Below are positions 3,894 through 20,080 of a stretch of 64,000 bases of DNA, in pieces. The notes below the pieces were generated by a model, which worked only from the letters and a program-made list of their open reading frames with translations, was not told the origin of the DNA and searched no databases. Both the position numbers and the translations under genes were made by a program. Every line of letters starts with the position of its first letter. Position 1 is the stretch's first letter. The DNA lies in IMG/VR virus record IMGVR_UViG_3300020188_000808, positions 1-64,000 of that record. One strand, 5' to 3'.

Positions 3894-4223
3894 ATGAGTA
3901 CCACTAAACTGTACACGGTAGCCGGCACGTCAAACAACAACGGCAAAACAAAAGTAAGGTTCGCGAATGACTATGTGAGTAGATTCAAGATCCTTGTAAA
4001 GAATCAACACGAGGACATCAAAATCGTAGAACTGCCATCAGCAATGAACAAGGCAGATGTATGTAAGTTCTTGTCAACTCATGCAGAGTTCCAGACAGAA
4101 GCACAACAGTCTGCGATCAATGAGTTCGTTGTAAGAAACATCAAACTTGATGCGACTCCAACAGCACCGGCACAGCCTGTAGCTGAAGCAGAGACCATTG
4201 AGGTAGAGCTAGAGACTGCATAG
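3894..4223 (+). CDS. Hypothetical protein
   Basis: ORF with canonical AGGAGG RBS. Confidence 0.85.
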   Translation: MSTTKLYTVAGTSNNNGKTKVRFANDYVSRFKILVKNQHEDIKIVELPSAMNKADVCKFLSTHAEFQTEAQQSAINEFVVRNIKLDATPTAPAQPVAEAETIEVELETA

Positions 4224-7992: not shown

Positions 7993-8178
7993 ATGCACAA
8001 GGACGTTCCCACACTAGAAGACCGTGTACTAGCTATCAAACTGCGTATAGCACAGTTCAAAGCTGAACACCCAGGGTTATACACTAGTCATACTACTGCA
8101 CACACTAGCAGTCATACGACTACTACTACTCGTACAGCTACTACTAGCATCAAGGACAAACTCAATAGCATACGCTAA
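7993..8178 (+). CDS. Small hypothetical protein, Thr-rich tail
   Basis: TAAATA 5 nt upstream of the ATG. Confidence 0.55.
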   Translation: MHKDVPTLEDRVLAIKLRIAQFKAEHPGLYTSHTTAHTSSHTTTTTRTATTSIKDKLNSIR

Positions 8179-10862: not shown

Positions 10863-11627
10863 TTAACTCCCGTATAGCTGTTTGTTTAGTTCTACTAGTT
10901 TAGGTCCAATTTGTTTGTGTGTGTCTTTGTCATCGCTGTGTAGCTGATGTATTTTGAATCCGTCAGTTAGATCCAAATCATTTCCTGTGAGTATGCTGTT
11001 GACACACTTGTCTGATAGCGAGTCATGGTTGTCACGAATCATATGATTGTAGCGAGTGTCAATGCCTCGTCGGTACCATAAGTCTCTTTGTTCTAGTGTA
11101 ACGAATTCATTGTTGCTTAGTGTATTGGTCATATCACCGTGTACTCTAACCAATCCTTTAAAGTCAATGGGCATTTCAAAACCCGGTATCAACAACAGAC
11201 TACAACCTACAGTTGTTTGTACACCCTTTAACCATGCTACCTGTGTTTCAAATCTAAACTGATCAATGTCGTTGCGTTGTAGATTTACAGCATAACCTTG
11301 TACACTATCAATTACATCTTGATCGATGTGTTCTTTTGCGGCCATCTGTGACCAGTTGCCGATCATATAGTTTGATAGTTCTGGAAAGTCTTTGATGAAC
11401 CAATGACGATATAAACTTGTAGTAACTACTACAACTACATCATTGGCAGTTAGTGTTGGAATACATTCACGTAGCTTCATTAGTATCCAGTCATTGCTGG
11501 TACCTACCATACTGTGATTGACTAATCCGTCCACATGCAGTTTCTCTGCAAGTTGTCTTGTCCAAGTCCAATCTGTTTCGTAGTCTACTGTAAAGCTGTC
11601 GCCAAAGAAATAAATCTTTCTACTCAT
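10863..11627 (-). CDS. SGNH-hydrolase-like hypothetical protein
   Basis: N-terminal FFGDSF, GTSN, late NH. Confidence 0.55.
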   Translation of the reverse strand: MSRKIYFFGDSFTVDYETDWTWTRQLAEKLHVDGLVNHSMVGTSNDWILMKLRECIPTLTANDVVVVVTTSLYRHWFIKDFPELSNYMIGNWSQMAAKEHIDQDVIDSVQGYAVNLQRNDIDQFRFETQVAWLKGVQTTVGCSLLLIPGFEMPIDFKGLVRVHGDMTNTLSNNEFVTLEQRDLWYRRGIDTRYNHMIRDNHDSLSDKCVNSILTGNDLDLTDGFKIHQLHSDDKDTHKQIGPKLVELNKQLYGS

Positions 11628-13059
11628 CGTCATCACCTAGATTAGCAAGGAAGCTTCTAAGTTTAGTACTGTCTGTTTGTGCTCTTACTTTGCCTATTGG
11701 AGCACCTTCGTTGGGTTCTTTTGGTGTGTCTGGTTCTTTGTCTGTGGTAACATTAGTGTTACGTTTTAGACTGTCCATAATACTACTCTGCGGAGCCGCA
11801 CCATAACCACTGCCGTCATCATCCTCATCTAAGTTTCTAATACGCAAACAATCAATGTCAAACTCTAGATCAATCTTTGCACCTACACCACTTGATGAAC
11901 GTGTCTTCATTAGCTGTATTTGATATCTACCACGTTCACGCATAGCTCTACTTGTAAAGATACCAATCACGTTATCAGCAGTTTGAATCTTACTAAGTCC
12001 ACCACTGATGTGACTGTGATCAAATTCAATTTCTTCTACACTTGATCTATTCAACTGCGATGCTGTAACAAAAATACAACCCAGTTCCATTGCCAAGTTA
12101 CGTAGTTCTTCACTTACATATTTGTCTTTAACATACAAGTTCTCTGCACTAATCTTTTGTCCTATTGGCATAAGCAAATCCAAATAGTCAATCAATAGTA
12201 CGTCTACTTTGCGTCCTGTTTTAACTTCATACTCTTTGATATAACTTCTTACATCATTGGTTGTCTTACCACTTGGCATATACTTGACTTGTAATGCACC
12301 TGATTTCTTGCCCATCATCTTGACTTTCATTTCAACACCGTCAAGATCTTTAAATATTTCTCTGCTAGGTATCTCAGTCATCATACTGTCAATACGCATA
12401 CTTACTAGTGCTTCACTAAGTTCTAAACTTAGATACACAACATTCATACCTTGTGTTGCCCAGTTAACTCCTAGGTTAGCCAAGAACAAACTCTTACCTG
12501 CACCTGATCCACCTGCAAATATATTAAGCTCGCCTTTGTTAAAGCCACCAAACAGTTTCTTGTCTAGTGCTTCCCAGCCTGTGCTTACTTGTCCGTTGTT
12601 GTCTTTTAGTCCTAGCAGTCTACCTTTAGGATCTTTAAAGTAGTCAATACCTAAGTCTTTTTGTAATCCAATCTGTACTGCTTCTTTGACTAGACTCTCG
12701 CACTGACCATACTCACCTTTTTCAATCAAGTCAGCACTTGTTAAAATTGCTTTCTCTAATGCTTTGTGCCTACTAAATGTTTCAAAGTCATTCAATAACC
12801 AATCATAGTGTTGTTCATTAAGTCCTGTTGGAATTTTTAAATTAGTACCTGGACATGCACTATTAACAATTTGTTCTGTAGGAAGTGTGTTGTGTTCTGC
12901 AACAAAGTCTCTAATAAATGTAGCACCTGCTTGTAGATTACGGTCAAAACTTTCTGGATCAAAGATACCCTGACAACGCACAAATGTTTGTGCATCGCTT
13001 AACATAATTTCTAAATATGTTTTTTGGATATCAAATCCGTAATCAGTATTTTGTTTCAC
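11620..13059 (-). CDS. Replicative DnaB-like helicase (T4 gp41-like)
   Basis: GSGAGKS, LSLEL, IDYLDL, TASQLNRS, MKTRSS. Confidence 0.93.
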   Translation of the reverse strand: MKQNTDYGFDIQKTYLEIMLSDAQTFVRCQGIFDPESFDRNLQAGATFIRDFVAEHNTLPTEQIVNSACPGTNLKIPTGLNEQHYDWLLNDFETFSRHKALEKAILTSADLIEKGEYGQCESLVKEAVQIGLQKDLGIDYFKDPKGRLLGLKDNNGQVSTGWEALDKKLFGGFNKGELNIFAGGSGAGKSLFLANLGVNWATQGMNVVYLSLELSEALVSMRIDSMMTEIPSREIFKDLDGVEMKVKMMGKKSGALQVKYMPSGKTTNDVRSYIKEYEVKTGRKVDVLLIDYLDLLMPIGQKISAENLYVKDKYVSEELRNLAMELGCIFVTASQLNRSSVEEIEFDHSHISGGLSKIQTADNVIGIFTSRAMRERGRYQIQLMKTRSSSGVGAKIDLEFDIDCLRIRNLDEDDDGSGYGAAPQSSIMDSLKRNTNVTTDKEPDTPKEPNEGAPIGKVRAQTDSTKLRSFLANLGDDDE

Positions 13060-13074
13060 GCAGTTATTCCTTTG

Positions 13075-14085
13075 TTATGCTTTACTATTATACCACATTG
13101 TTGGATCAAAGTCAATCGTTCGTTTCTCCAATGCAAGTACTGCACCAATACAACTTCCAGGATCACCTGGGTTTGGCGGTACGTAAATTGAATTCCAATC
13201 TTGTTTGATTCTATTTACTGCATCTCTATTTAATGCACATCCGCCTGTGAGAATTAAATTTCGACTTTGAAGATTATTTTTACACCAAGTACTTTGACTT
13301 TTAATAATCAATTCAAATACAAACTGTGTTGCATTAGCAAGTCTTTTCATATCATATTCAGTGGTTAGGTCTGACTTGTACCAACTAGCACCACGGTGTA
13401 GATTGTGTTTAAACTTGACACCTGGTACACTACCATCTAATGGTCCATCAATGAATGTATCAACCATGTGATTGATCAATTCTAAATTTTCTGACGTAGC
13501 AATGTCATTACCCATTTGTGATACTAGATACTCATCTCTGTTTGCTACAAGGCCCATACGTTGTGTCATTGCACTATAGAACAATCCAATGCTGTGTGGA
13601 TATCCTTGACTGTAAACTTTTTTAAGTTTACGATTCTTATCACCATGCCAAATAGTAAATGTTTCAAACTCACCAATAGAGTCTAAACACATTACAACTG
13701 CATTCGGTTCTGCTTGTGTGTAGAATCCATATGCGGCATGACTAGTATGATGTTTAGCAAACCTAACAGGGCATTTGATGTCCCATTGTTTTAGATAGTT
13801 TGTGATATTGTTTTCCATAAGCACTTCACGTACTGTGCCTTGTCCTGCTCGCCATTGTCTAAATGATTTAAGGTATGGTAGTTCGTACCAAACAACTTTG
13901 TCTGGCTCGCCGTATAGTTTACGTGCCATTGCAATTTGTTCGTCACTGTGTTTAGGATCTCCTGGTACGTCACTAAAGTCTTTTGCAAGACTAGCCCACA
14001 GACATTGTAGATCGTCAAACGGTCCTTTCTCAAAGACTGCTAAACTAGCATCGTGACTGTTACCAACCATACCCCAAATAATCAT
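13075..14085 (-). CDS. Carbamoyltransferase (NodU/CmcH family), N-terminal Kae1-like domain only
   Basis: SHDASLA, HHTSHAA, DSIGEFET, GGCALN, NPGDPGS. Confidence 0.85.
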   Translation of the reverse strand: MIIWGMVGNSHDASLAVFEKGPFDDLQCLWASLAKDFSDVPGDPKHSDEQIAMARKLYGEPDKVVWYELPYLKSFRQWRAGQGTVREVLMENNITNYLKQWDIKCPVRFAKHHTSHAAYGFYTQAEPNAVVMCLDSIGEFETFTIWHGDKNRKLKKVYSQGYPHSIGLFYSAMTQRMGLVANRDEYLVSQMGNDIATSENLELINHMVDTFIDGPLDGSVPGVKFKHNLHRGASWYKSDLTTEYDMKRLANATQFVFELIIKSQSTWCKNNLQSRNLILTGGCALNRDAVNRIKQDWNSIYVPPNPGDPGSCIGAVLALEKRTIDFDPTMWYNSKA

Positions 14086-14670
14086 TTATCTTTTCTCCGA
14101 GATCTTATCTGCAAGTCCGTATGCAACTGCTTCTTCGGCACTCATAAAGTAATCACGATCCATGTCTTTCATAAAGTCTTCTCGTGTCTTGCCTGCTGAG
14201 TTGTGCTTAACATACAAGTCAGTTAGATTCTCTTTTAGGTATTGAATCTCTTTGTAACGTATTTCAATATCACTTGCCATACCCGAAGCACCGCCGCTTG
14301 GCTGATGAATCATTGTACGTGCATTTGGTAATAGGATACGCTTACCTGGTGTGCCTGCTTGTGCAAGGAATGATCCCATGCTACATGCTTGTCCTAATAC
14401 TATTGTGCTAACATCACTTTTAATATATTGCATAGTATCATAGATAGCCATGCCACTAGTAATAACACCGCCTGGGCTGTTAATATAAAAGTTAATTGTT
14501 TTTTCTGGTGCTTGACTTTCTAAGAAAAGCATTTGTGCTACTACAACGTTTGCACTATGATCGTCTACTGGACCATTTAACATTACAATTCTATCTTTTA
14601 GTAGTCGACTGTAAATGTCATATGCTCTTTCGCCTTTGCTTGTAGATTCTACTACCATTGGTACTAACAT
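14086..14670 (-). CDS. clpP: ATP-dependent Clp protease proteolytic subunit
   Basis: [35 protein letters not shown]. Confidence 0.97.
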
Positions 14671-15336
14671 CTATTCTTCTCCTTGGTTATGATTTGGCTC
14701 AACGTTCCATACGTTAAAGCTCATGCTTATTCGTTCAACATCGCTTTTAAATGGATACACACTATGCTTTAGTCCTGCATTAAACAATAGTATGTCTCCG
14801 GTCTTTGGTATTACTTTATGTGTTCCGTTAACGCCTAACACGTCAGAACCATAAAAGAATTCTAATTGCCCTGGGCAACGCATATTACTTCTTAAATTAT
14901 CATTTGCTTCTTCTGCAATTACTTCTGGCACATCAATATATAATATTGCACTAATCATTCCTGAGTGACTGTGCATAGGATTAAATTCATTTGCCTTTTG
15001 AAAGTTAATCCACGGTCCAGTGTTTAAATTAAAATTCATACTTGCAAAGTCAGGTGTTTCAGTTGATGGGTTAATCATATGTGTTTGTCTATGATCCCAA
15101 TCTGTTTGCATGTATGTAGCTAAATGCTTACTTACTAACTTCATAAACTCCTGTTGTTGATCAGGATCCATAATTGCTTGTAGTTGGTCATCAATGTTAC
15201 CTGCTAGATCACTGCCCACGTTTTCTTTTACATCACGTGTCCACGTTGCACACTTATGTAGCAATGTCATTAGTTCGCTACTCATAGTGCTACGATAGAT
15301 AGTAGGACCAAAAGGTCTAATTAATTCATAATCCAT
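14671..15336 (-). CDS. 2OG-Fe(II) oxygenase-like protein
   Basis: NPMHSH, LKHSVYPF, RISMSFN. Confidence 0.75.
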   Translation of the reverse strand: MDYELIRPFGPTIYRSTMSSELMTLLHKCATWTRDVKENVGSDLAGNIDDQLQAIMDPDQQQEFMKLVSKHLATYMQTDWDHRQTHMINPSTETPDFASMNFNLNTGPWINFQKANEFNPMHSHSGMISAILYIDVPEVIAEEANDNLRSNMRCPGQLEFFYGSDVLGVNGTHKVIPKTGDILLFNAGLKHSVYPFKSDVERISMSFNVWNVEPNHNQGEE

Positions 15337-15458
15337 TATTTGTAAATGAAAGGATCTTTCTTTTGAAGTTCCTTAATCCTCTGTTTAAATTTTCTATTCT
15401 TCTGCCATTTCTTGTACCATCTAATTGGAGATAGTAACTTGTCTTTTAACCAAACCAT
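15336..15458 (-). CDS. Small basic protein (40 aa, not in ORF track)
   Basis: MVWLKDK...KELQKKDPFIYK; fills the gap between primase and oxygenase; TAATG coupling. Confidence 0.6.
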   Translation of the reverse strand: MVWLKDKLLSPIRWYKKWQKNRKFKQRIKELQKKDPFIYK

Positions 15459-16429
15459 TTTTTACTCCTAAGTTTAATCTTTAATGATGAGCTTTCTGAA
15501 TGTGTTACAATTTGATGTAGTGTATATATTCTTCCATACTTTGTAATTGCATCGTTCACATCATTAATGTCTTGATCCCAGTCCGGCATACTAACACTCC
15601 AACCAAATTCTATTGCTTGATCAATTAGTTTATGTCCTGCTTCATCTCTATCTGGAACTAGTATTACTTGCTTATTTAACGACTTGATGAGTAGGTGCTG
15701 TTGATCTTTGACTTCGCTACCTAGTAGTGCTAGTCCTTCTATGCCAATAGCATCCATAGGTCCTTCAACTACAATAACAAACTGTCTACGATAGTCTTGT
15801 TGATCCATATTAAACACATAACCAGGCTGTTGCTCACTCATATATTTTGGAGCACCATCAGTAACTTTCCTTGCTGTGTATCCTACTATTTGATTGTTAA
15901 AATAAAACGGAACTATTAATCTATCTCTGTATCCAATCTTAGGTGTCCAATGAAAGTTGTAGTCTTCTAAGTACAACTGTCTTGACTTCATATACTCTAA
16001 TACTTTAATTAAATGAGCGTCAGTAGTATCAGTATATTCGCTTATTGGCTTTGCACCTTCTGGCAGTTCTACTGTCTTAAACTCTGGCATACGTGTTATT
16101 GCTTGTAGAGCTTCGTCGGATTCAAATTGTAATACTGCTAGGGATAGTTTATTAATAGCATCATCGCTAACGTTAATCCATTGCAAGAACTTTTTCATCT
16201 TGTAGGTAATACGTCTACCTTTATTCCAACTTGCTGTGTAGCCACAATTGAAACAATGATAGCTTACACCTTCTTCTGCATTTTGGATTAGTCCACCACG
16301 TTGTCTAGTATCAGCACCTGTACCATTGTGTACGCAACAAGGAGCATTGAAGCTGGTCCAACCACTTGGTGTAGTTTTACGCTTCGCAGGCAAGTGTGCT
16401 AATATAGTTTCGTGTACGATTCCGCTCAT
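15446..16429 (-). CDS. DNA primase (gp61-like)
   Basis: Zn motif CCVH...HCFNC; TOPRIM VVEGPMD, PDRDEAG. Confidence 0.9.
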   Translation of the reverse strand: MSGIVHETILAHLPAKRKTTPSGWTSFNAPCCVHNGTGADTRQRGGLIQNAEEGVSYHCFNCGYTASWNKGRRITYKMKKFLQWINVSDDAINKLSLAVLQFESDEALQAITRMPEFKTVELPEGAKPISEYTDTTDAHLIKVLEYMKSRQLYLEDYNFHWTPKIGYRDRLIVPFYFNNQIVGYTARKVTDGAPKYMSEQQPGYVFNMDQQDYRRQFVIVVEGPMDAIGIEGLALLGSEVKDQQHLLIKSLNKQVILVPDRDEAGHKLIDQAIEFGWSVSMPDWDQDINDVNDAITKYGRIYTLHQIVTHSESSSLKIKLRSKKWFG

Positions 16430-17286: not shown

Positions 17287-17655
17287 ATGTTACTAAAAGA
17301 TATCGAAACTAACTTCCCGTTCTTAAGCATCGTACAGTATGGTGGCAACGAGTATGTTGGTATCATTAACAACCAGGATAATTATGTAACAAGCATGTAT
17401 GTTTATACCGCATTGAATACAGACGAATCAAAAAAAGCATTTCTCGATCTTGGAGAAGCATGGTGGTTTGAAAGTAATCGAACAATACCGATCAGTATCT
17501 TTCTACCGAAAGAGTTTCCTGCATTTAGACATTGTCTAATGACAATGAATACTAAAGATGTAAAAGTAACAGTAGGACCGGTTGTAAACTTAGGAAACTT
17601 AGCAATTAAAAGAGTAAAACGTAAGAGTGTTCAACTAGTACGTAAACCCAAATAA
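17287..17655 (+). CDS. Hypothetical protein
   Basis: Divergent ORF filling the gap. Confidence 0.75.
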   Translation: MLLKDIETNFPFLSIVQYGGNEYVGIINNQDNYVTSMYVYTALNTDESKKAFLDLGEAWWFESNRTIPISIFLPKEFPAFRHCLMTMNTKDVKVTVGPVVNLGNLAIKRVKRKSVQLVRKPK

Positions 17656-17657
17656 AT

Positions 17658-18377
17658 CTACTTGTAGCGTTTAGTTAAAAGTTTTGGTCTATAGTGCTGA
17701 GCCTTAAACAGGCTGTTATGTATGAATTGCGTAATCTTACTATGTGAGCTTCGATAATCGCCAACCGCCGTCTCCATTTCAAATGTTTCACGCTTAAAAG
17801 GAATAACTTGAGCTAAAGGCATTCCTCTCTCAAATGTAATTTCTTTGTCAATAGGTGCAGTAAAAATTGTATTGACGTGTAGTTCATGATAGATATCTGT
17901 ATCAACTACTCCATGCATTACTTCTAAGTTATCATTTTTTGAATATGTAGGAGTTATAATTAATGAACTATATCCAGGAGGAGTTCTTAACATCCAAGGA
18001 TTCATAAACTTAAATGCGCCTCTGTAACTATCTTTATGAAATGGATAGTTGTCCATTTGTTCTTCTGGATGAAGCTGTGCAGTAAACATACTTGAAACGT
18101 TAGGCGGAGTCGCATAACGTACTTCAGTACCTTGCATGTTTTTAACTTGTGTTACTTTATAATCACACCACAATGGAATAATATAACCCATACCTAGTAC
18201 GTCAAGTACAGCCGGACAACGTCTTAAGGTGCTTGACTCTCTACGATATTCTTTACTGTCATCTGTATTAGCTCTTTGATTTTTAAACCATTCAGGCCAA
18301 AACTTTGATGCAGGCAATACTGGTAATGTTTGTTCTAGTTCTTCGTACCCTGTGAAAAATTTAATCTTCGTTGTCAT
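17658..18377 (-). CDS. Hypothetical protein, paralog of 22931-23650
   Basis: Shared PEW(F/W)K, CPA(V/I)xD, GxIxPxWC, (N/S)PW, GxPxxQxIP motifs. Confidence 0.75.
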   Translation of the reverse strand: MTTKIKFFTGYEELEQTLPVLPASKFWPEWFKNQRANTDDSKEYRRESSTLRRCPAVLDVLGMGYIIPLWCDYKVTQVKNMQGTEVRYATPPNVSSMFTAQLHPEEQMDNYPFHKDSYRGAFKFMNPWMLRTPPGYSSLIITPTYSKNDNLEVMHGVVDTDIYHELHVNTIFTAPIDKEITFERGMPLAQVIPFKRETFEMETAVGDYRSSHSKITQFIHNSLFKAQHYRPKLLTKRYK

Positions 18378-18933
18378 GTTTAATCCTTTCGCACAATAAG
18401 TTCATGTGAACAATAATAGCATGTGCGTAAGCTACTGCGTGTGCTTTCTTAAAGTAGTATGCTCCATCAGTTGGCTTTGTCCACACTTCCTTGTGTATCT
18501 CTTCCCAACTCTTGTTCGCTAGATGTCTCTTCGCTGGTCTTATTATCGCTAGTGTCGCCGCCAATTCTAATACCGAGCTGGGCTTCAAGACTTTTAATAG
18601 ACTGCTGTGCCCGTTTAGATGAAAGACTTTTTCGCTGAAGTCTTCGTGTTCCAGAAGTTGCCATAGTGGTTTCCTTTCCATTAGTTCGTTTAGATGTTCT
18701 TCGTTTTTTACTTCGTCATAGATTGATACATTTAAAAAGTCTAATTTAAAGTATCCTCTTTCTTCTGCTGTGTCGTGATCAACTGTGCTTAATAAGTCAA
18801 TAGGATTATGTGGAATCTCAGTTGCGTAAATTCCTGTGTTATGCTTTTTACCTGTGTTTAACTTTGCTACACGATGTTTTAATTTATCGAGTATAATTTG
18901 TCTGTCTGCAAAGTCAATATCAATATCTGGCAT
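18361..18933 (-). CDS. Miniature DNA polymerase III alpha (DnaE)-like protein
   Basis: PDIDIDF, HNTGIY, FKLDFL, AIIRP, FKKAHAVAY in 190 aa. Confidence 0.8.
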   Translation of the reverse strand: MPDIDIDFADRQIILDKLKHRVAKLNTGKKHNTGIYATEIPHNPIDLLSTVDHDTAEERGYFKLDFLNVSIYDEVKNEEHLNELMERKPLWQLLEHEDFSEKVFHLNGHSSLLKVLKPSSVLELAATLAIIRPAKRHLANKSWEEIHKEVWTKPTDGAYYFKKAHAVAYAHAIIVHMNLLCERIKHDNED

Positions 18934-18936
18934 ATA

Positions 18937-19626
18937 TTATAATCCTGCTTTCTTTACAATTTCTTTTACTAGTTCAACATCTACTGGACTTCTTTTAAAT
19001 CGTGTACTCCAATGACTTGGATCAAGAATAGCATATACAATTTGTAATTGTTCATCATTCATTTTAGACACCATCTCTTTACCAGACTTGCAATTTAATA
19101 TCAACCACGGACTTACTTTGCCGTCTACTATATCTTGACATACTCTATTTAAACTTACATAGTTAAAGTAGTCTTGCCACCTAGCTTCGTTGTCGTCACC
19201 CCATTCCATCATGTTTTTAACACTACGTTCAAGAGCAGTTTCAACACCTTCCTTACGAATAAGATCAAGTGCATACTTTTCATATAGTTCTTCTCTACAC
19301 CAATGGTCTAGTTTAACTCCGCTTGTAACTACATAGTCAATATACTTCTCTGGGTATAACGGTCTTACGTTACTAACAAAGCTACCAAATTTTACAAATG
19401 CATTGTAGTACTGACTATTGCAAAACTGTTCATATGTTTTAACACCATCAAAGCGTTGACATAGTTTATAAAATCTATTAAACGTTAAGTACCCTAGTTG
19501 TACACGTTTCTCGTCTTTTTGTAAAGCTCTACGTTTCTTTTCACACATATGTACTGCAAGAGTTTTTTCTCTTGTGTACGATACTTTACAGTATGGACAT
19601 TCAAATCCTTCGTTAGACTTTGACAT
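18937..19626 (-). CDS. Hypothetical protein with N-terminal Zn-finger
   Basis: CPYC...HMC; start reassigned to MSKSNEG. Confidence 0.75.
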   Translation of the reverse strand: MSKSNEGFECPYCKVSYTREKTLAVHMCEKKRRALQKDEKRVQLGYLTFNRFYKLCQRFDGVKTYEQFCNSQYYNAFVKFGSFVSNVRPLYPEKYIDYVVTSGVKLDHWCREELYEKYALDLIRKEGVETALERSVKNMMEWGDDNEARWQDYFNYVSLNRVCQDIVDGKVSPWLILNCKSGKEMVSKMNDEQLQIVYAILDPSHWSTRFKRSPVDVELVKEIVKKAGL

Positions 19627-20080
19627 CTTTTTTATCCATCCCGTGTTGCTCGGCAAGCTCTTTAAGTTCTTTTGTTGTAGATATTCTAGCAAGTAATTCT
19701 ACCTCGTCTATTTTCATATTAGGAAACATTTCTTTAAGAAACTTAACAGCCTTGTTATCAGAGCCTTTTTGTTTTAATCCTAACCATTGATGGTGTCTGC
19801 TTTTACGTGTTGCGTTATGTGTTGCACACAACAGTTGCCATTGTAGCTGTGGATGTCTTGTTCCTAGTACATTCCAATTCTTGTTATAATATTCATTAGT
19901 GGCAATAACTGCCCATTCTTTTGCGTCTTGTGATCCGCTTACACTACTTGCATAACGATTAAGCAACCAAAAGTTTAATTCTTTACGCTCTTCTTCAGTC
20001 CATTCTTTATATGCACCTTTGGCATCCATATCCAAAGCCATAAAGATCTCACTTAAAGGTAGTTTATTTTTCTGTTTCAT
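19613..20080 (-). CDS. Putative clamp-loader small subunit (gp62-like)
   Basis: FWLLNRYAS...NEYYN...LQWQLL...HQWL pattern resembles gp62; size and replication context fit. Confidence 0.5.
   Translation of the reverse strand: MKQKNKLPLSEIFMALDMDAKGAYKEWTEEERKELNFWLLNRYASSVSGSQDAKEWAVIATNEYYNKNWNVLGTRHPQLQWQLLCATHNATRKSRHHQWLGLKQKGSDNKAVKFLKEMFPNMKIDEVELLARISTTKELKELAEQHGMDKKDVKV

What the first reader, a model, noticed from the sequence alone, without database searches (positions are those of the whole stretch)
18361..18933. 190-aa minimal C-family (DnaE-like) polymerase
Seen: the DnaE motifs occur in order and include all three catalytic Asp positions (PDIDIDF, HNTGIY, KLDFL, IRP, FKKAHAVAY). 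The intervening regions are collapsed, and the PHP, clamp-binding and OB domains are absent. The ORF is intact and its neighbours are not obvious DnaE pieces. Established: DnaE exceeds 1000 aa, and T4-type phages normally use a family B polymerase. Inference: a stand-alone mini-polymerase or nucleotidyltransferase, or a subunit of a split replicase with the adjacent Zn-finger and gp62-like proteins.
Basis: partly seen in the sequence, partly recalled or inferred. Interest (0 to 1): 0.7.

Follow-up and report, generated by a model that had tools for sequence, protein, structure and literature searches.

The report
Half of a split mini-Pol III
This intact 190-residue jumbo-phage gene is the catalytic-aspartate half of a two-gene, stripped-down relative of the bacterial replicase DnaE; the family was described by sequence analysis in 2021 but I found no report that it has been tested at the bench.

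Summary
Window 18361-18933 (minus strand) is an intact 190-aa ORF with DnaE core motifs in order. D3/D5/D65 correspond to E. coli D401/D403/D555.

The ORF is not a complete enzyme. The strand and GRGS nucleotide-binding motif that finish the Pol-beta-like palm lie in a separate 173-aa ORF at 230285-230806 of the same 267.8-kb record. That ORF stops at the residue matching E. coli N393. The target starts at the residue matching M399.

Both halves are conserved, co-occurring and separate in about 96 cultured jumbo phages and in thousands of metagenomic clusters. dN/dS is 0.10-0.18. A complex prediction scored 0.92 against a best control of 0.23. Rare metagenomic relatives carry the halves fused in one 375-aa chain.

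The genome also has a full family B polymerase. No PHP, HhH or DnaQ match was found in the 75% of it that is held.

Iyer et al. 2021 (Viruses 13:63) already described this split minimal Pol III alpha of "group 2.2" jumbo phages, so it is known, and I found no report of bench work.

It is a subunit of a split enzyme, but the required partner is distant, not adjacent.

The parts
18361..18933 (-). C-terminal half of the split minimal Pol III alpha (190 aa, P0001): second and third palm strands with the Asp triad, plus a reduced fingers module
18910..18930 (-). PDIDIDF (res 2-8). D3, D5 and D7 correspond to E. coli D401, D403 and D405. They are conserved in 83, 83 and 82 of 84 diverse homologs.
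   Evidence: E. coli catalytic residues from PMC8485763
18832..18843 (-). HNTG (res 31-34), matched by motif to E. coli H511-AG-G514. H31 is conserved in 82/84 and G34 in 83/84. The ~82 E. coli residues between D405 and H511 (the thumb region) have no counterpart.
18739..18747 (-). K63-L-D65 of KLDFL = E. coli K553-F-D555 (third catalytic Asp). K63 and D65 are invariant in 84/84.
18535..18540 (-). R132-P133 of IRPAK = E. coli R639-P640 (start of fingers). Invariant in 84/84.
18439..18453 (-). FKKAH (res 161-165) = E. coli FNKSH 756-760. H165 corresponds to the proposed steric-gate H760 and is conserved in 83/84.
18937..19626 (-). Upstream neighbour, a C2H2-like Zn-finger protein (phrog_11058). 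Its stop lies 3 nt before the target's ATG. Same phyletic spread as the mini-Pol III halves. Function unknown; a candidate accessory factor only.
19613..20080 (-). 155-aa protein (phrog_11758). Atlas features point to T4 gp62-type clamp-loader small subunit (PF16790). This is a lead only.
17287..17655 (+). Convergent small ORF (phrog_11637). It is the conserved downstream neighbour of the C half in Phosso, PA5oct, Atu_ph07, 121Q, G006 and the fused-gene contig.
15446..16429 (-). Toprim DNA primase, part of the conserved replication block that holds the C half
11620..13059 (-). DnaB-like replicative helicase of the same block

Best explanation
The ORF is the C-terminal, metal- and template-binding half of a two-polypeptide minimal C-family (Pol III alpha-like) polymerase found in one clade of T4-related jumbo phages.

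Its partner is a 173-aa protein encoded at 230285-230806 (minus strand) of the same viral record, outside the window. By comparison with a relative, that is about 120 kb away on the full genome.

Shown or directly computed:
- The N half supplies a 66-residue N-terminal extension, the palm region matching E. coli alpha 270-393, and the invariant GVGRGS nucleotide-binding motif.
- The C half supplies the strand with D3/D5/D7, the strand with K63/D65, and a shortened fingers module with R132-P133 and the FKK[S/A]H helix.
- The break falls in the loop between E. coli N393 and M399. The catalytic beta-sheet and active site therefore exist only in the heterodimer.
- PHP, thumb, about 88 residues of fingers, the beta-binding domain and the OB domain are all absent.

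Inferred:
- The heterodimer is an active enzyme that uses dNTPs, because the steric-gate His is kept.
- It is a weakly processive DNA polymerase that works beside the phage's family B replicase.
- Its place in the primase-helicase gene block suggests primer extension or gap filling at the fork, perhaps with further DNA-binding helpers.
For: Two halves in one genome, exactly collinear with DnaE:

The split site is conserved. Every N half examined ends ...EFLx-stop and every C half starts within 15 residues of DxDxD.

Co-occurrence:
- 96 and 97 phage records with near-identical genus counts.
- A fused query gives 186 places in 96 records, and no record has one place covering 80% of it.
- 4 of 4 cultured phages tested hold both halves, as does IMG/VR record G006.

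Complex prediction: ipSAE 0.92 in all three runs, best of 3 controls 0.23. That mark was reached by 51 of 78 solved complexes and 2 of 108 mismatched pairs. The runs share at least 98% of contacts and the partner's pLDDT is at least 91. N residues 134-147 touch C residues 2-9.

Fusion evidence: three independent metagenomic clusters of 375-376 aa carry N half, a 9-residue linker and C half in one chain. The fused gene sits at the C-half locus.

Selection and conservation:
- dN/dS 0.10-0.18 against 30 relatives.
- Catalytic and nucleotide-contact residues are invariant or nearly so.
- At least 7956 and 7990 90%-identity clusters of constant length.

Genome context: a full PolB with exonuclease domain and no PHP, HHH_6 or RNase_T match.

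Literature: the same conclusion was reached from sequence analysis by Iyer et al. 2021 (PMC7824862).
Against: - I found no biochemical data for any member, so activity, substrate and heterodimer formation are all inferred.
- The complex score may partly reflect the model's memory of single-chain DnaE structures (caveat stated).
- The thumb, the beta-binding domain and the distal fingers hold the DNA duplex in DnaE. Their absence makes a free-standing template-directed polymerase hard to picture.
- The record is only 75% complete, so the absence of other Pol III parts is not proven for this genome.
- Pfam alone does not place the C half in a DnaE family (13.4 bits against a cut-off of 22).
Confidence: 0.8

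Rival explanations
1. The 190-aa protein is a stand-alone mini-polymerase or nucleotidyltransferase that needs no partner.
For: All three acidic residues and the fingers motifs are in this one chain. It folds confidently alone in silico, pLDDT 96.4.
Against: - It lacks the first palm strand and the G-S motif, which in E. coli DnaE lie at 361-364, upstream of the point where this ORF begins.
- Those elements sit in a co-occurring, equally conserved partner gene.
- The predicted interface runs through the active site.
- Natural fusions join the two halves.
Confidence: 0.03
2. The heterodimer is active but is not a templated DNA polymerase. It could be a terminal transferase, a DNA-end or protein nucleotidylating enzyme, or a maker of a nucleotide signal, as in other Pol-beta-fold enzymes.
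For: - The thumb, clamp-binding and distal-finger DNA-holding parts are lost.
- No exonuclease partner was found in the held part of the genome.
- The phage already has a complete PolB.
Against: - The fingers elements that in Pol III alpha face the incoming dNTP are kept under strong constraint. These include the proposed steric-gate His (H165 83/84; R132-P133 84/84).
- The gene sits in the primase/helicase/clamp-loader block in every lineage looked at except Xoo-sp13, where its immediate neighbours were not examined.
Confidence: 0.13
3. The C half also forms a stable complex with the adjacent Zn-finger protein and/or the gp62-like protein. These would supply the missing DNA or clamp contacts.
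For: - The Zn-finger protein has the same phyletic spread: 93 phage records with matching genus counts.
- It lies just upstream of the C half in this window, PA5oct, 121Q, Phosso, Atu_ph07 and G006.
- Its stop codon is 3 nt from the target's ATG here.
- The 155-aa neighbour resembles clamp-loader small subunits by Atlas features.
Against: - In Xoo-sp13 the Zn-finger gene is 10 kb from the C half.
- Shared synteny in a conserved replication block is weak evidence of binding.
Confidence: 0.15
4. The ORF is a decaying remnant or a non-catalytic structural leftover of a captured dnaE gene.
For: It is much shorter than any cellular DnaE. One paper called the N half of phage CBB 'truncated'.
Against: - dN/dS is 0.10-0.18.
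- Length is constant over thousands of clusters.
- Catalytic residues are invariant or nearly so.
- The break point is the same in phages as far apart as 25-50% identity.
Confidence: 0.02
5. The two halves are joined into one chain after translation by a split intein, as in cyanobacterial dnaE-n/dnaE-c.
For: Separately encoded dnaE halves joined by a natural split intein are known in cyanobacteria (my own knowledge, not checked here).
Against: - The N half stops at the equivalent of E. coli N393 and the C half begins at M399, so there is no room for intein halves.
- Pfam finds no intein or Hint domain in either half.
- The residue after the initiator Met is Pro, not Cys, Ser or Thr.
Confidence: 0.01

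Closest known systems
Split minimal DNA polymerase III alpha of 'group 2.2' jumbo phages (Iyer, Anantharaman, Krishnan, Burroughs, Aravind 2021, Viruses 13:63; PHROG families 11778 and 11127)
   Same: [quoted passage not shown]
   Different: Nothing essential. This copy comes from an uncultured, very abundant clade known from metagenome assemblies, only 50% identical to its closest cultured-phage match.

In the passages of that paper I read I did not see:
- rare single-chain fused forms that nest inside split forms;
- N-to-C spacing that ranges from 14 to 224 kb between lineages.
Bacterial DnaE / PolC (full-length C-family replicases, e.g. E. coli alpha, 1160 aa)
   Same: A homologous Pol-beta-like palm with the same GRGS motif, the Asp triad (D401/D403/D555 equivalents), K553, R639-P640 and the FNKSH helix with the steric-gate His.
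   Different: It is two chains instead of one. It has no PHP domain, no thumb (about 82 residues missing), about 88 residues of fingers missing, and nothing after the equivalent of E. coli ~785, so no distal fingers, beta-binding or OB domain. The N half carries a 66-residue N-terminal extension with no DnaE match.
Cyanobacterial split dnaE joined by a natural split intein
   Same: A C-family polymerase encoded by two distant genes.
   Different: There are no intein halves here. The break lies inside the palm before the DxD strand, not in the fingers. The products must stay as two chains.
Full-length DnaE-type polymerases of 'group 3.2' jumbo phages (phage G, c-st)
   Same: A phage-borne C-family polymerase.
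   Different: Those are host-like, single-chain, carry a PHP domain and are the phage's only replicase. This one is minimal, split and accompanies a PolB.

Membership tests
Split minimal Pol III alpha of group 2.2 jumbo phages (C half, phrog_11778) | Full-length match to the C-half family | tested here: met
   phrog_11778 E 8.8e-58, residues 3-183 on profile 8-194 of 197. 37-51% identity to the PA5oct, Phosso, Atu_ph07 and 121Q copies.
Split minimal Pol III alpha of group 2.2 jumbo phages (C half, phrog_11778) | A separate N-terminal (NTP-binding) half encoded elsewhere in the same genome | tested here: met
   173-aa ORF at G000:C1:230285-230806(-). PF07733 E 1.6e-10; phrog_11127 E 5.4e-43. 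It ends where the C half begins.
Split minimal Pol III alpha of group 2.2 jumbo phages (C half, phrog_11778) | Accompanied by a family B polymerase and by no other Pol III domains | tested here: met
   889-aa PolB with exonuclease domain. No PHP, HHH_6 or RNase_T match. The record is 75% complete, so absence is not absolute.
Split minimal Pol III alpha of group 2.2 jumbo phages (C half, phrog_11778) | The two halves reconstitute one catalytic module | tested here: met
   In silico only. ipSAE 0.92 against a best control of 0.23; that mark was reached by 51 of 78 solved complexes and 2 of 108 mismatched pairs; runs agree on at least 98% of contacts; partner pLDDT at least 91. Natural single-chain fusions exist. 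Not shown biochemically.
Split minimal Pol III alpha of group 2.2 jumbo phages (C half, phrog_11778) | Polymerase activity | not testable with these tools
   I found no published assay. Only conservation of catalytic residues and purifying selection are available.
Cellular DnaE/PolC (full-length C-family replicase) | N-terminal PHP domain | tested here: not met
   No PF02811 match in either protein or anywhere in the held genome.
Cellular DnaE/PolC (full-length C-family replicase) | Palm with G-S motif and Asp triad in one polypeptide | tested here: not met
   GRGS is in the N-half gene and the Asp triad is in this gene.
Cellular DnaE/PolC (full-length C-family replicase) | Thumb, complete fingers, beta-clamp-binding and OB domains | tested here: not met
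   190 residues span E. coli 400-784. About 82 residues are missing between D405 and H511, about 88 between R639 and F756, and everything after ~785. No HHH_6 match. No conserved C-terminal tail.
Cellular DnaE/PolC (full-length C-family replicase) | Score above Pfam gathering cut-off for a DnaE domain | tested here: not met
   For the C half only PF17657 at 13.4 bits against a cut-off of 22. The N half does pass PF07733, 41.5 against 23.9.
Intein-split DnaE (cyanobacterial type) | Split-intein halves at the break and a Cys/Ser/Thr first extein residue | tested here: not met
   No spare sequence at the break. No intein domain. Residue 2 is Pro.

The most novel reading that the evidence does not exclude
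The two-chain mini-Pol III is an obligate heterodimer whose active site forms only on assembly. It serves as the fork's primer-extension polymerase: it takes over from the neighbouring primase and hands off to the family B replicase, in the way DnaE is said to serve PolC in Bacillus or Pol alpha serves the eukaryotic replicases. DNA grip would come from a phage-specific helper such as the co-distributed Zn-finger protein. It would then be the smallest known C-family polymerase core and a bench model for how this family was built up from a bare Pol-beta-like palm.
Probability: 0.25. Interest if true: 0.7.

Novelty: already known. Interest (0 to 1): 0.4.

Why it matters
C-family polymerases are the bacterial replicases, and all characterised members I know of exceed 1000 residues. 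A conserved core of 173 + 190 residues, split through its own catalytic sheet, would be the minimal form of this enzyme class. It would also be a natural two-piece system for studying how the palm, fingers and accessory domains contribute to catalysis, fidelity and DNA grip. It raises the question of why an abundant clade of T4-like jumbo phages keeps a second polymerase beside PolB.

The idea is already in print (Iyer et al. 2021), so the value of this window is confirmation, not discovery.
- the scale of the family, about 8000 or more 90%-identity clusters for each half;
- the strength of purifying selection;
- a passing heterodimer prediction;
- rare secondary re-fusions of the two halves.

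Tried and rejected
- **Fused-form model.** An alignment of the fused form with both halves (A4) put the N halves against the wrong part of the fused sequence (10-13% identity). I did not use it, so no model of a whole single-chain form was made.
- **N half alone.** AlphaFold gave a poor model (pLDDT 67.8, residues 1-75 below 50). Only residues 67-173 could be mapped.
- **Co-occurrence in long IMG/VR records.** The N half was absent from five records that hold the C half. The C half was absent from four of five records that hold the N half. These absences say nothing: with the 120-kb spacing seen in G006, the partner falls beyond the end of every one of those partial records.
- **More fused forms.** None were found in IMG/VR or in cultured phages.
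- **Co-expression data.** The PA5oct RNA-seq paper has no held supplement, so co-expression of the two halves could not be checked.
- **Clamp-binding tail.** No conserved C-terminal tail was seen.
- **Literature.** Searches for any biochemical study found none.
- **Rejected readings.** Stand-alone enzyme, pseudogene and intein-spliced product; the reasons are under the rival explanations.
- **Not run.** Complex prediction with the Zn-finger and gp62-like neighbours, because only one job was allowed and it went to the N half.

Full report
**1. The observation**

Window 18361-18933 holds an intact 190-codon ORF on the minus strand. An AGGA lies 9 nt upstream of the ATG, and the upstream gene's stop is 3 nt away.

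Pfam alone barely sees it: DNA_pol3_finger at 13.4 bits, below the cut-off. Other evidence is much stronger:
- PHROGs places it end to end in phrog_11778, 'DNA polymerase', E 8.8e-58, with a weaker match to the full-length DnaE-type family phrog_405.
- A profile of eight family members finds DnaE chains as its best PDB hits, with four collinear blocks on M. tuberculosis DnaE1.
- An AlphaFold model built on 84 diverse homologs is very confident (pLDDT 96.4, pTM 0.89).
- Foldseek returns C-family polymerases as the first 15 hits.

**2. Residue mapping onto E. coli DnaE**

I fetched E. coli dnaE and indexed its motifs.
- hhalign puts residues 51-135 on E. coli 541-642. So K63-L-D65 = K553-F-D555 and R132-P133 = R639-P640.
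- By motif identity, P2-D3-I-D5-I-D7-F = P400-D401-F-D403-V-D405-F.
- H31..G34 = H511..G514.
- F161-K-K-A-H165 = F756-N-K-S759-H760.

D401, D403 and D555 are the active-site residues of E. coli alpha, and H760 is the proposed steric gate against ribonucleotides (PMC8485763).

Compared with E. coli alpha, the C half lacks:
- about 82 residues between D405 and H511 (the thumb region);
- about 88 residues of the fingers;
- everything beyond about residue 785.

**3. The missing piece of the active site**

The ORF starts exactly at the DxD strand. The preceding strand and the G-S nucleotide-binding motif of DnaE's palm (E. coli G361-R-G-S364) are not in it.

A search of the window's own genome found a second DnaE piece. 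That genome is an IMG/VR record of 267,783 bases, 75% complete. The piece is a 173-aa ORF at 230285-230806, minus strand.
- It passes Pfam DNA_pol3_alpha, E 1.6e-10, profile positions 16-94.
- It is phrog_11127, E 5.4e-43.
- It aligns to Taq DnaE 385-454 and E. coli 328-392.
- It contains an invariant GVGRGS.
- It ends ...REFLR-stop, the equivalent of E. coli E389-R-F-L-N393. The target begins at the equivalent of M399.

The two ORFs are therefore the two halves of one minimal palm-plus-fingers module, cut in the loop before the catalytic DxD strand.

**4. Evidence that the two halves work together**

(a) *Co-occurrence.* tblastn finds the C half in 96 and the N half in 97 phage records, with near-identical genus counts. 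A fused query gives 186 places in 96 records and never one place covering 80% of it. All four cultured phages checked have both halves, and so does IMG/VR record G006.

(b) *Conserved break point.* The break is the same in lineages only 25-50% identical. Spacing between the halves differs widely:

| Phage or record | N-to-C spacing |
|---|---|
| Xoo-sp13 | 14 kb |
| 121Q | 31 kb |
| PA5oct | 43.6 kb |
| G006 | 120 kb |
| Atu_ph07 | 182 kb |
| Phosso | 224 kb |

(c) *Complex prediction.* The score was 0.92 in all three runs against a best control of 0.23. That mark was reached by 51 of 78 solved complexes and 2 of 108 mismatched pairs. The runs agree on at least 98% of contacts and the partner's pLDDT is at least 91. 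N residues 134-147, which include GVGRGS, touch C residues 2-9, the Asp strand. The N half's last helix packs on the FKKAH helix. The tool warns that such a pass can come from memory of solved relatives, and here the relatives are single-chain DnaE structures. It shows likeness, not binding.

(d) *Folding alone versus together.* The N half alone folds poorly in silico (pLDDT 67.8) but reaches pLDDT 92 in the complex. The two predictions used different methods, so this is only suggestive.

(e) *Natural fusions.* Three 90%-identity clusters of 375-376 aa, from ENA and Logan assemblies, carry N half, a 9-residue linker and C half in one chain. The fused gene lies at the C-half locus, next to the usual convergent small ORF. 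In a maximum-likelihood tree of C halves, the fused forms are one clade (100/100) nested several starred nodes deep among split forms. The fusion therefore looks secondary. This is a 'Rosetta stone' link between the halves.

**5. Is it functional?**

The family is large and uniform.
- At least 7956 clusters for the C half and 7990 for the N half were found, and both searches were capped at 8000 candidates. Lengths among the 120 closest clusters of each are 184-200 and 171-176 aa.
- There are 406 representatives at 50% identity. The full-length ones are 183-219 aa.
- Over 84 diverse C halves: D3 83/84, D5 83/84, D7 82/84, K63 84/84, D65 84/84, R132 and P133 84/84, H31 82/84, G34 83/84, H165 83/84.
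- Nei-Gojobori dN/dS against 30 IMG/VR relatives is 0.10-0.18. One further pair gave 0.058 at a saturated dS of 3.0.

Keeping the steric-gate His and its Ser/Ala neighbour argues for dNTP use. That step is inference.

**6. Genome context**

The C half sits in a replication block that recurs in Phosso, Atu_ph07, PA5oct, 121Q and G006. The gene order is:
1. a gp62-like 155-aa protein (Atlas lead to PF16790);
2. a Zn-finger protein (phrog_11058);
3. the C half;
4. a convergent small ORF;
5. a virion structural protein;
6. the primase;
7. the DnaB-like helicase.

The N half has its own conserved neighbours, a small phrog_14844 protein and a GroES-like protein.

The genome encodes an 889-aa family B polymerase with an exonuclease domain. 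No PHP, HHH_6 or DnaQ-type match was found in the 75% held.

**7. Comparison with what is known**

Iyer et al. 2021 (PMC7824862) describe exactly this. [quoted passage not shown] They suggest it may help the PolB enzyme on one strand or in repair.

[quoted passage not shown] I found no biochemical work.

The feature is thus a member of a known, computationally defined family. It is not a member of cellular DnaE/PolC, because the PHP domain, thumb, clamp-binding part, OB domain and single chain are all tested here and not met. It is not an intein-split DnaE.

**8. Verdict**

It is a subunit of a split enzyme, but it is not stand-alone, and its obligatory partner is a distant gene rather than the neighbours.
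- The Zn-finger neighbour remains an untested candidate helper. It has the same phyletic spread but is not always adjacent.
- Mechanism: the heterodimer rebuilds a Pol-beta-like palm with reduced fingers and most likely adds dNTPs to a primer. Its role at the fork, such as primer extension or gap filling beside PolB, is inferred from context only.
- Novelty: already known.
- Interest is moderate. The enzyme is remarkable and apparently uncharacterised, but it is not a new finding.

Noticed in passing
L010:1066-2193 (ENA metagenome contig); proteins P0218, P0273, P0274: Rare single-chain (375-376 aa) versions of the mini-Pol III, with both halves joined by a 9-residue linker. They form one clade nested inside split forms, so they look like a secondary re-fusion. 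None was found in cultured phages or in IMG/VR.
   Followed up: yes
window 17658-18377 (-): A 239-aa DUF6065 gene (PF19541, E 2.9e-9; phrog_7084) lies between the C half and the convergent ORF and overlaps the C half's 3' end by 17 nt. It is absent from that position in the 71%-identical relative G006 (L178), so it looks like a lineage-specific insertion.
   Followed up: partly
window 13075-15336 (-): Three genes sit between the DnaB-like helicase and the primase: a carbamoyltransferase-N-like protein (13075-14085), a ClpP protease (14086-14670, E 4e-78) and a 2OG-Fe(II) oxygenase (14671-15336). In PA5oct and 121Q the helicase and primase genes are adjacent.
   Followed up: no
window 18937-19626 (-): A C2H2-like Zn-finger protein of unknown function (phrog_11058). 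It has the same distribution as the mini-Pol III halves (93 phage records, all full length). It usually lies just upstream of the C half, but is 10 kb away in Xoo-sp13.
   Followed up: partly
window 19613-20080 (-): A 155-aa protein with no Pfam hit. Its Atlas features resemble clusters carrying PF16790 (phage clamp-loader A subunit, T4 gp62 type): score 0.93, 69 of 100 hits.
   Followed up: partly
L007:3992-4567 (Agrobacterium phage Atu_ph07, NC_042013.1 gp074): The RefSeq CDS for the C half starts 27 codons late (locus position 4073) and so leaves out the catalytic DIDID motif. The open frame with an ATG begins at 3992.
   Followed up: yes
G000:C1:228788-232027 (L004), outside the window: The N half is followed by a phrog_14844 protein, a GroES-like co-chaperonin and a MazG-like pyrophosphatase. 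The order N half - small protein - chaperonin recurs in PA5oct and 121Q.
   Followed up: partly
whole record G000 compared with G006 and G001: If the 120-kb N-to-C spacing of relative G006 holds here, the full genome is about 332 kb. That agrees with CheckV's 75% completeness for the 267.8-kb record.
   Followed up: partly
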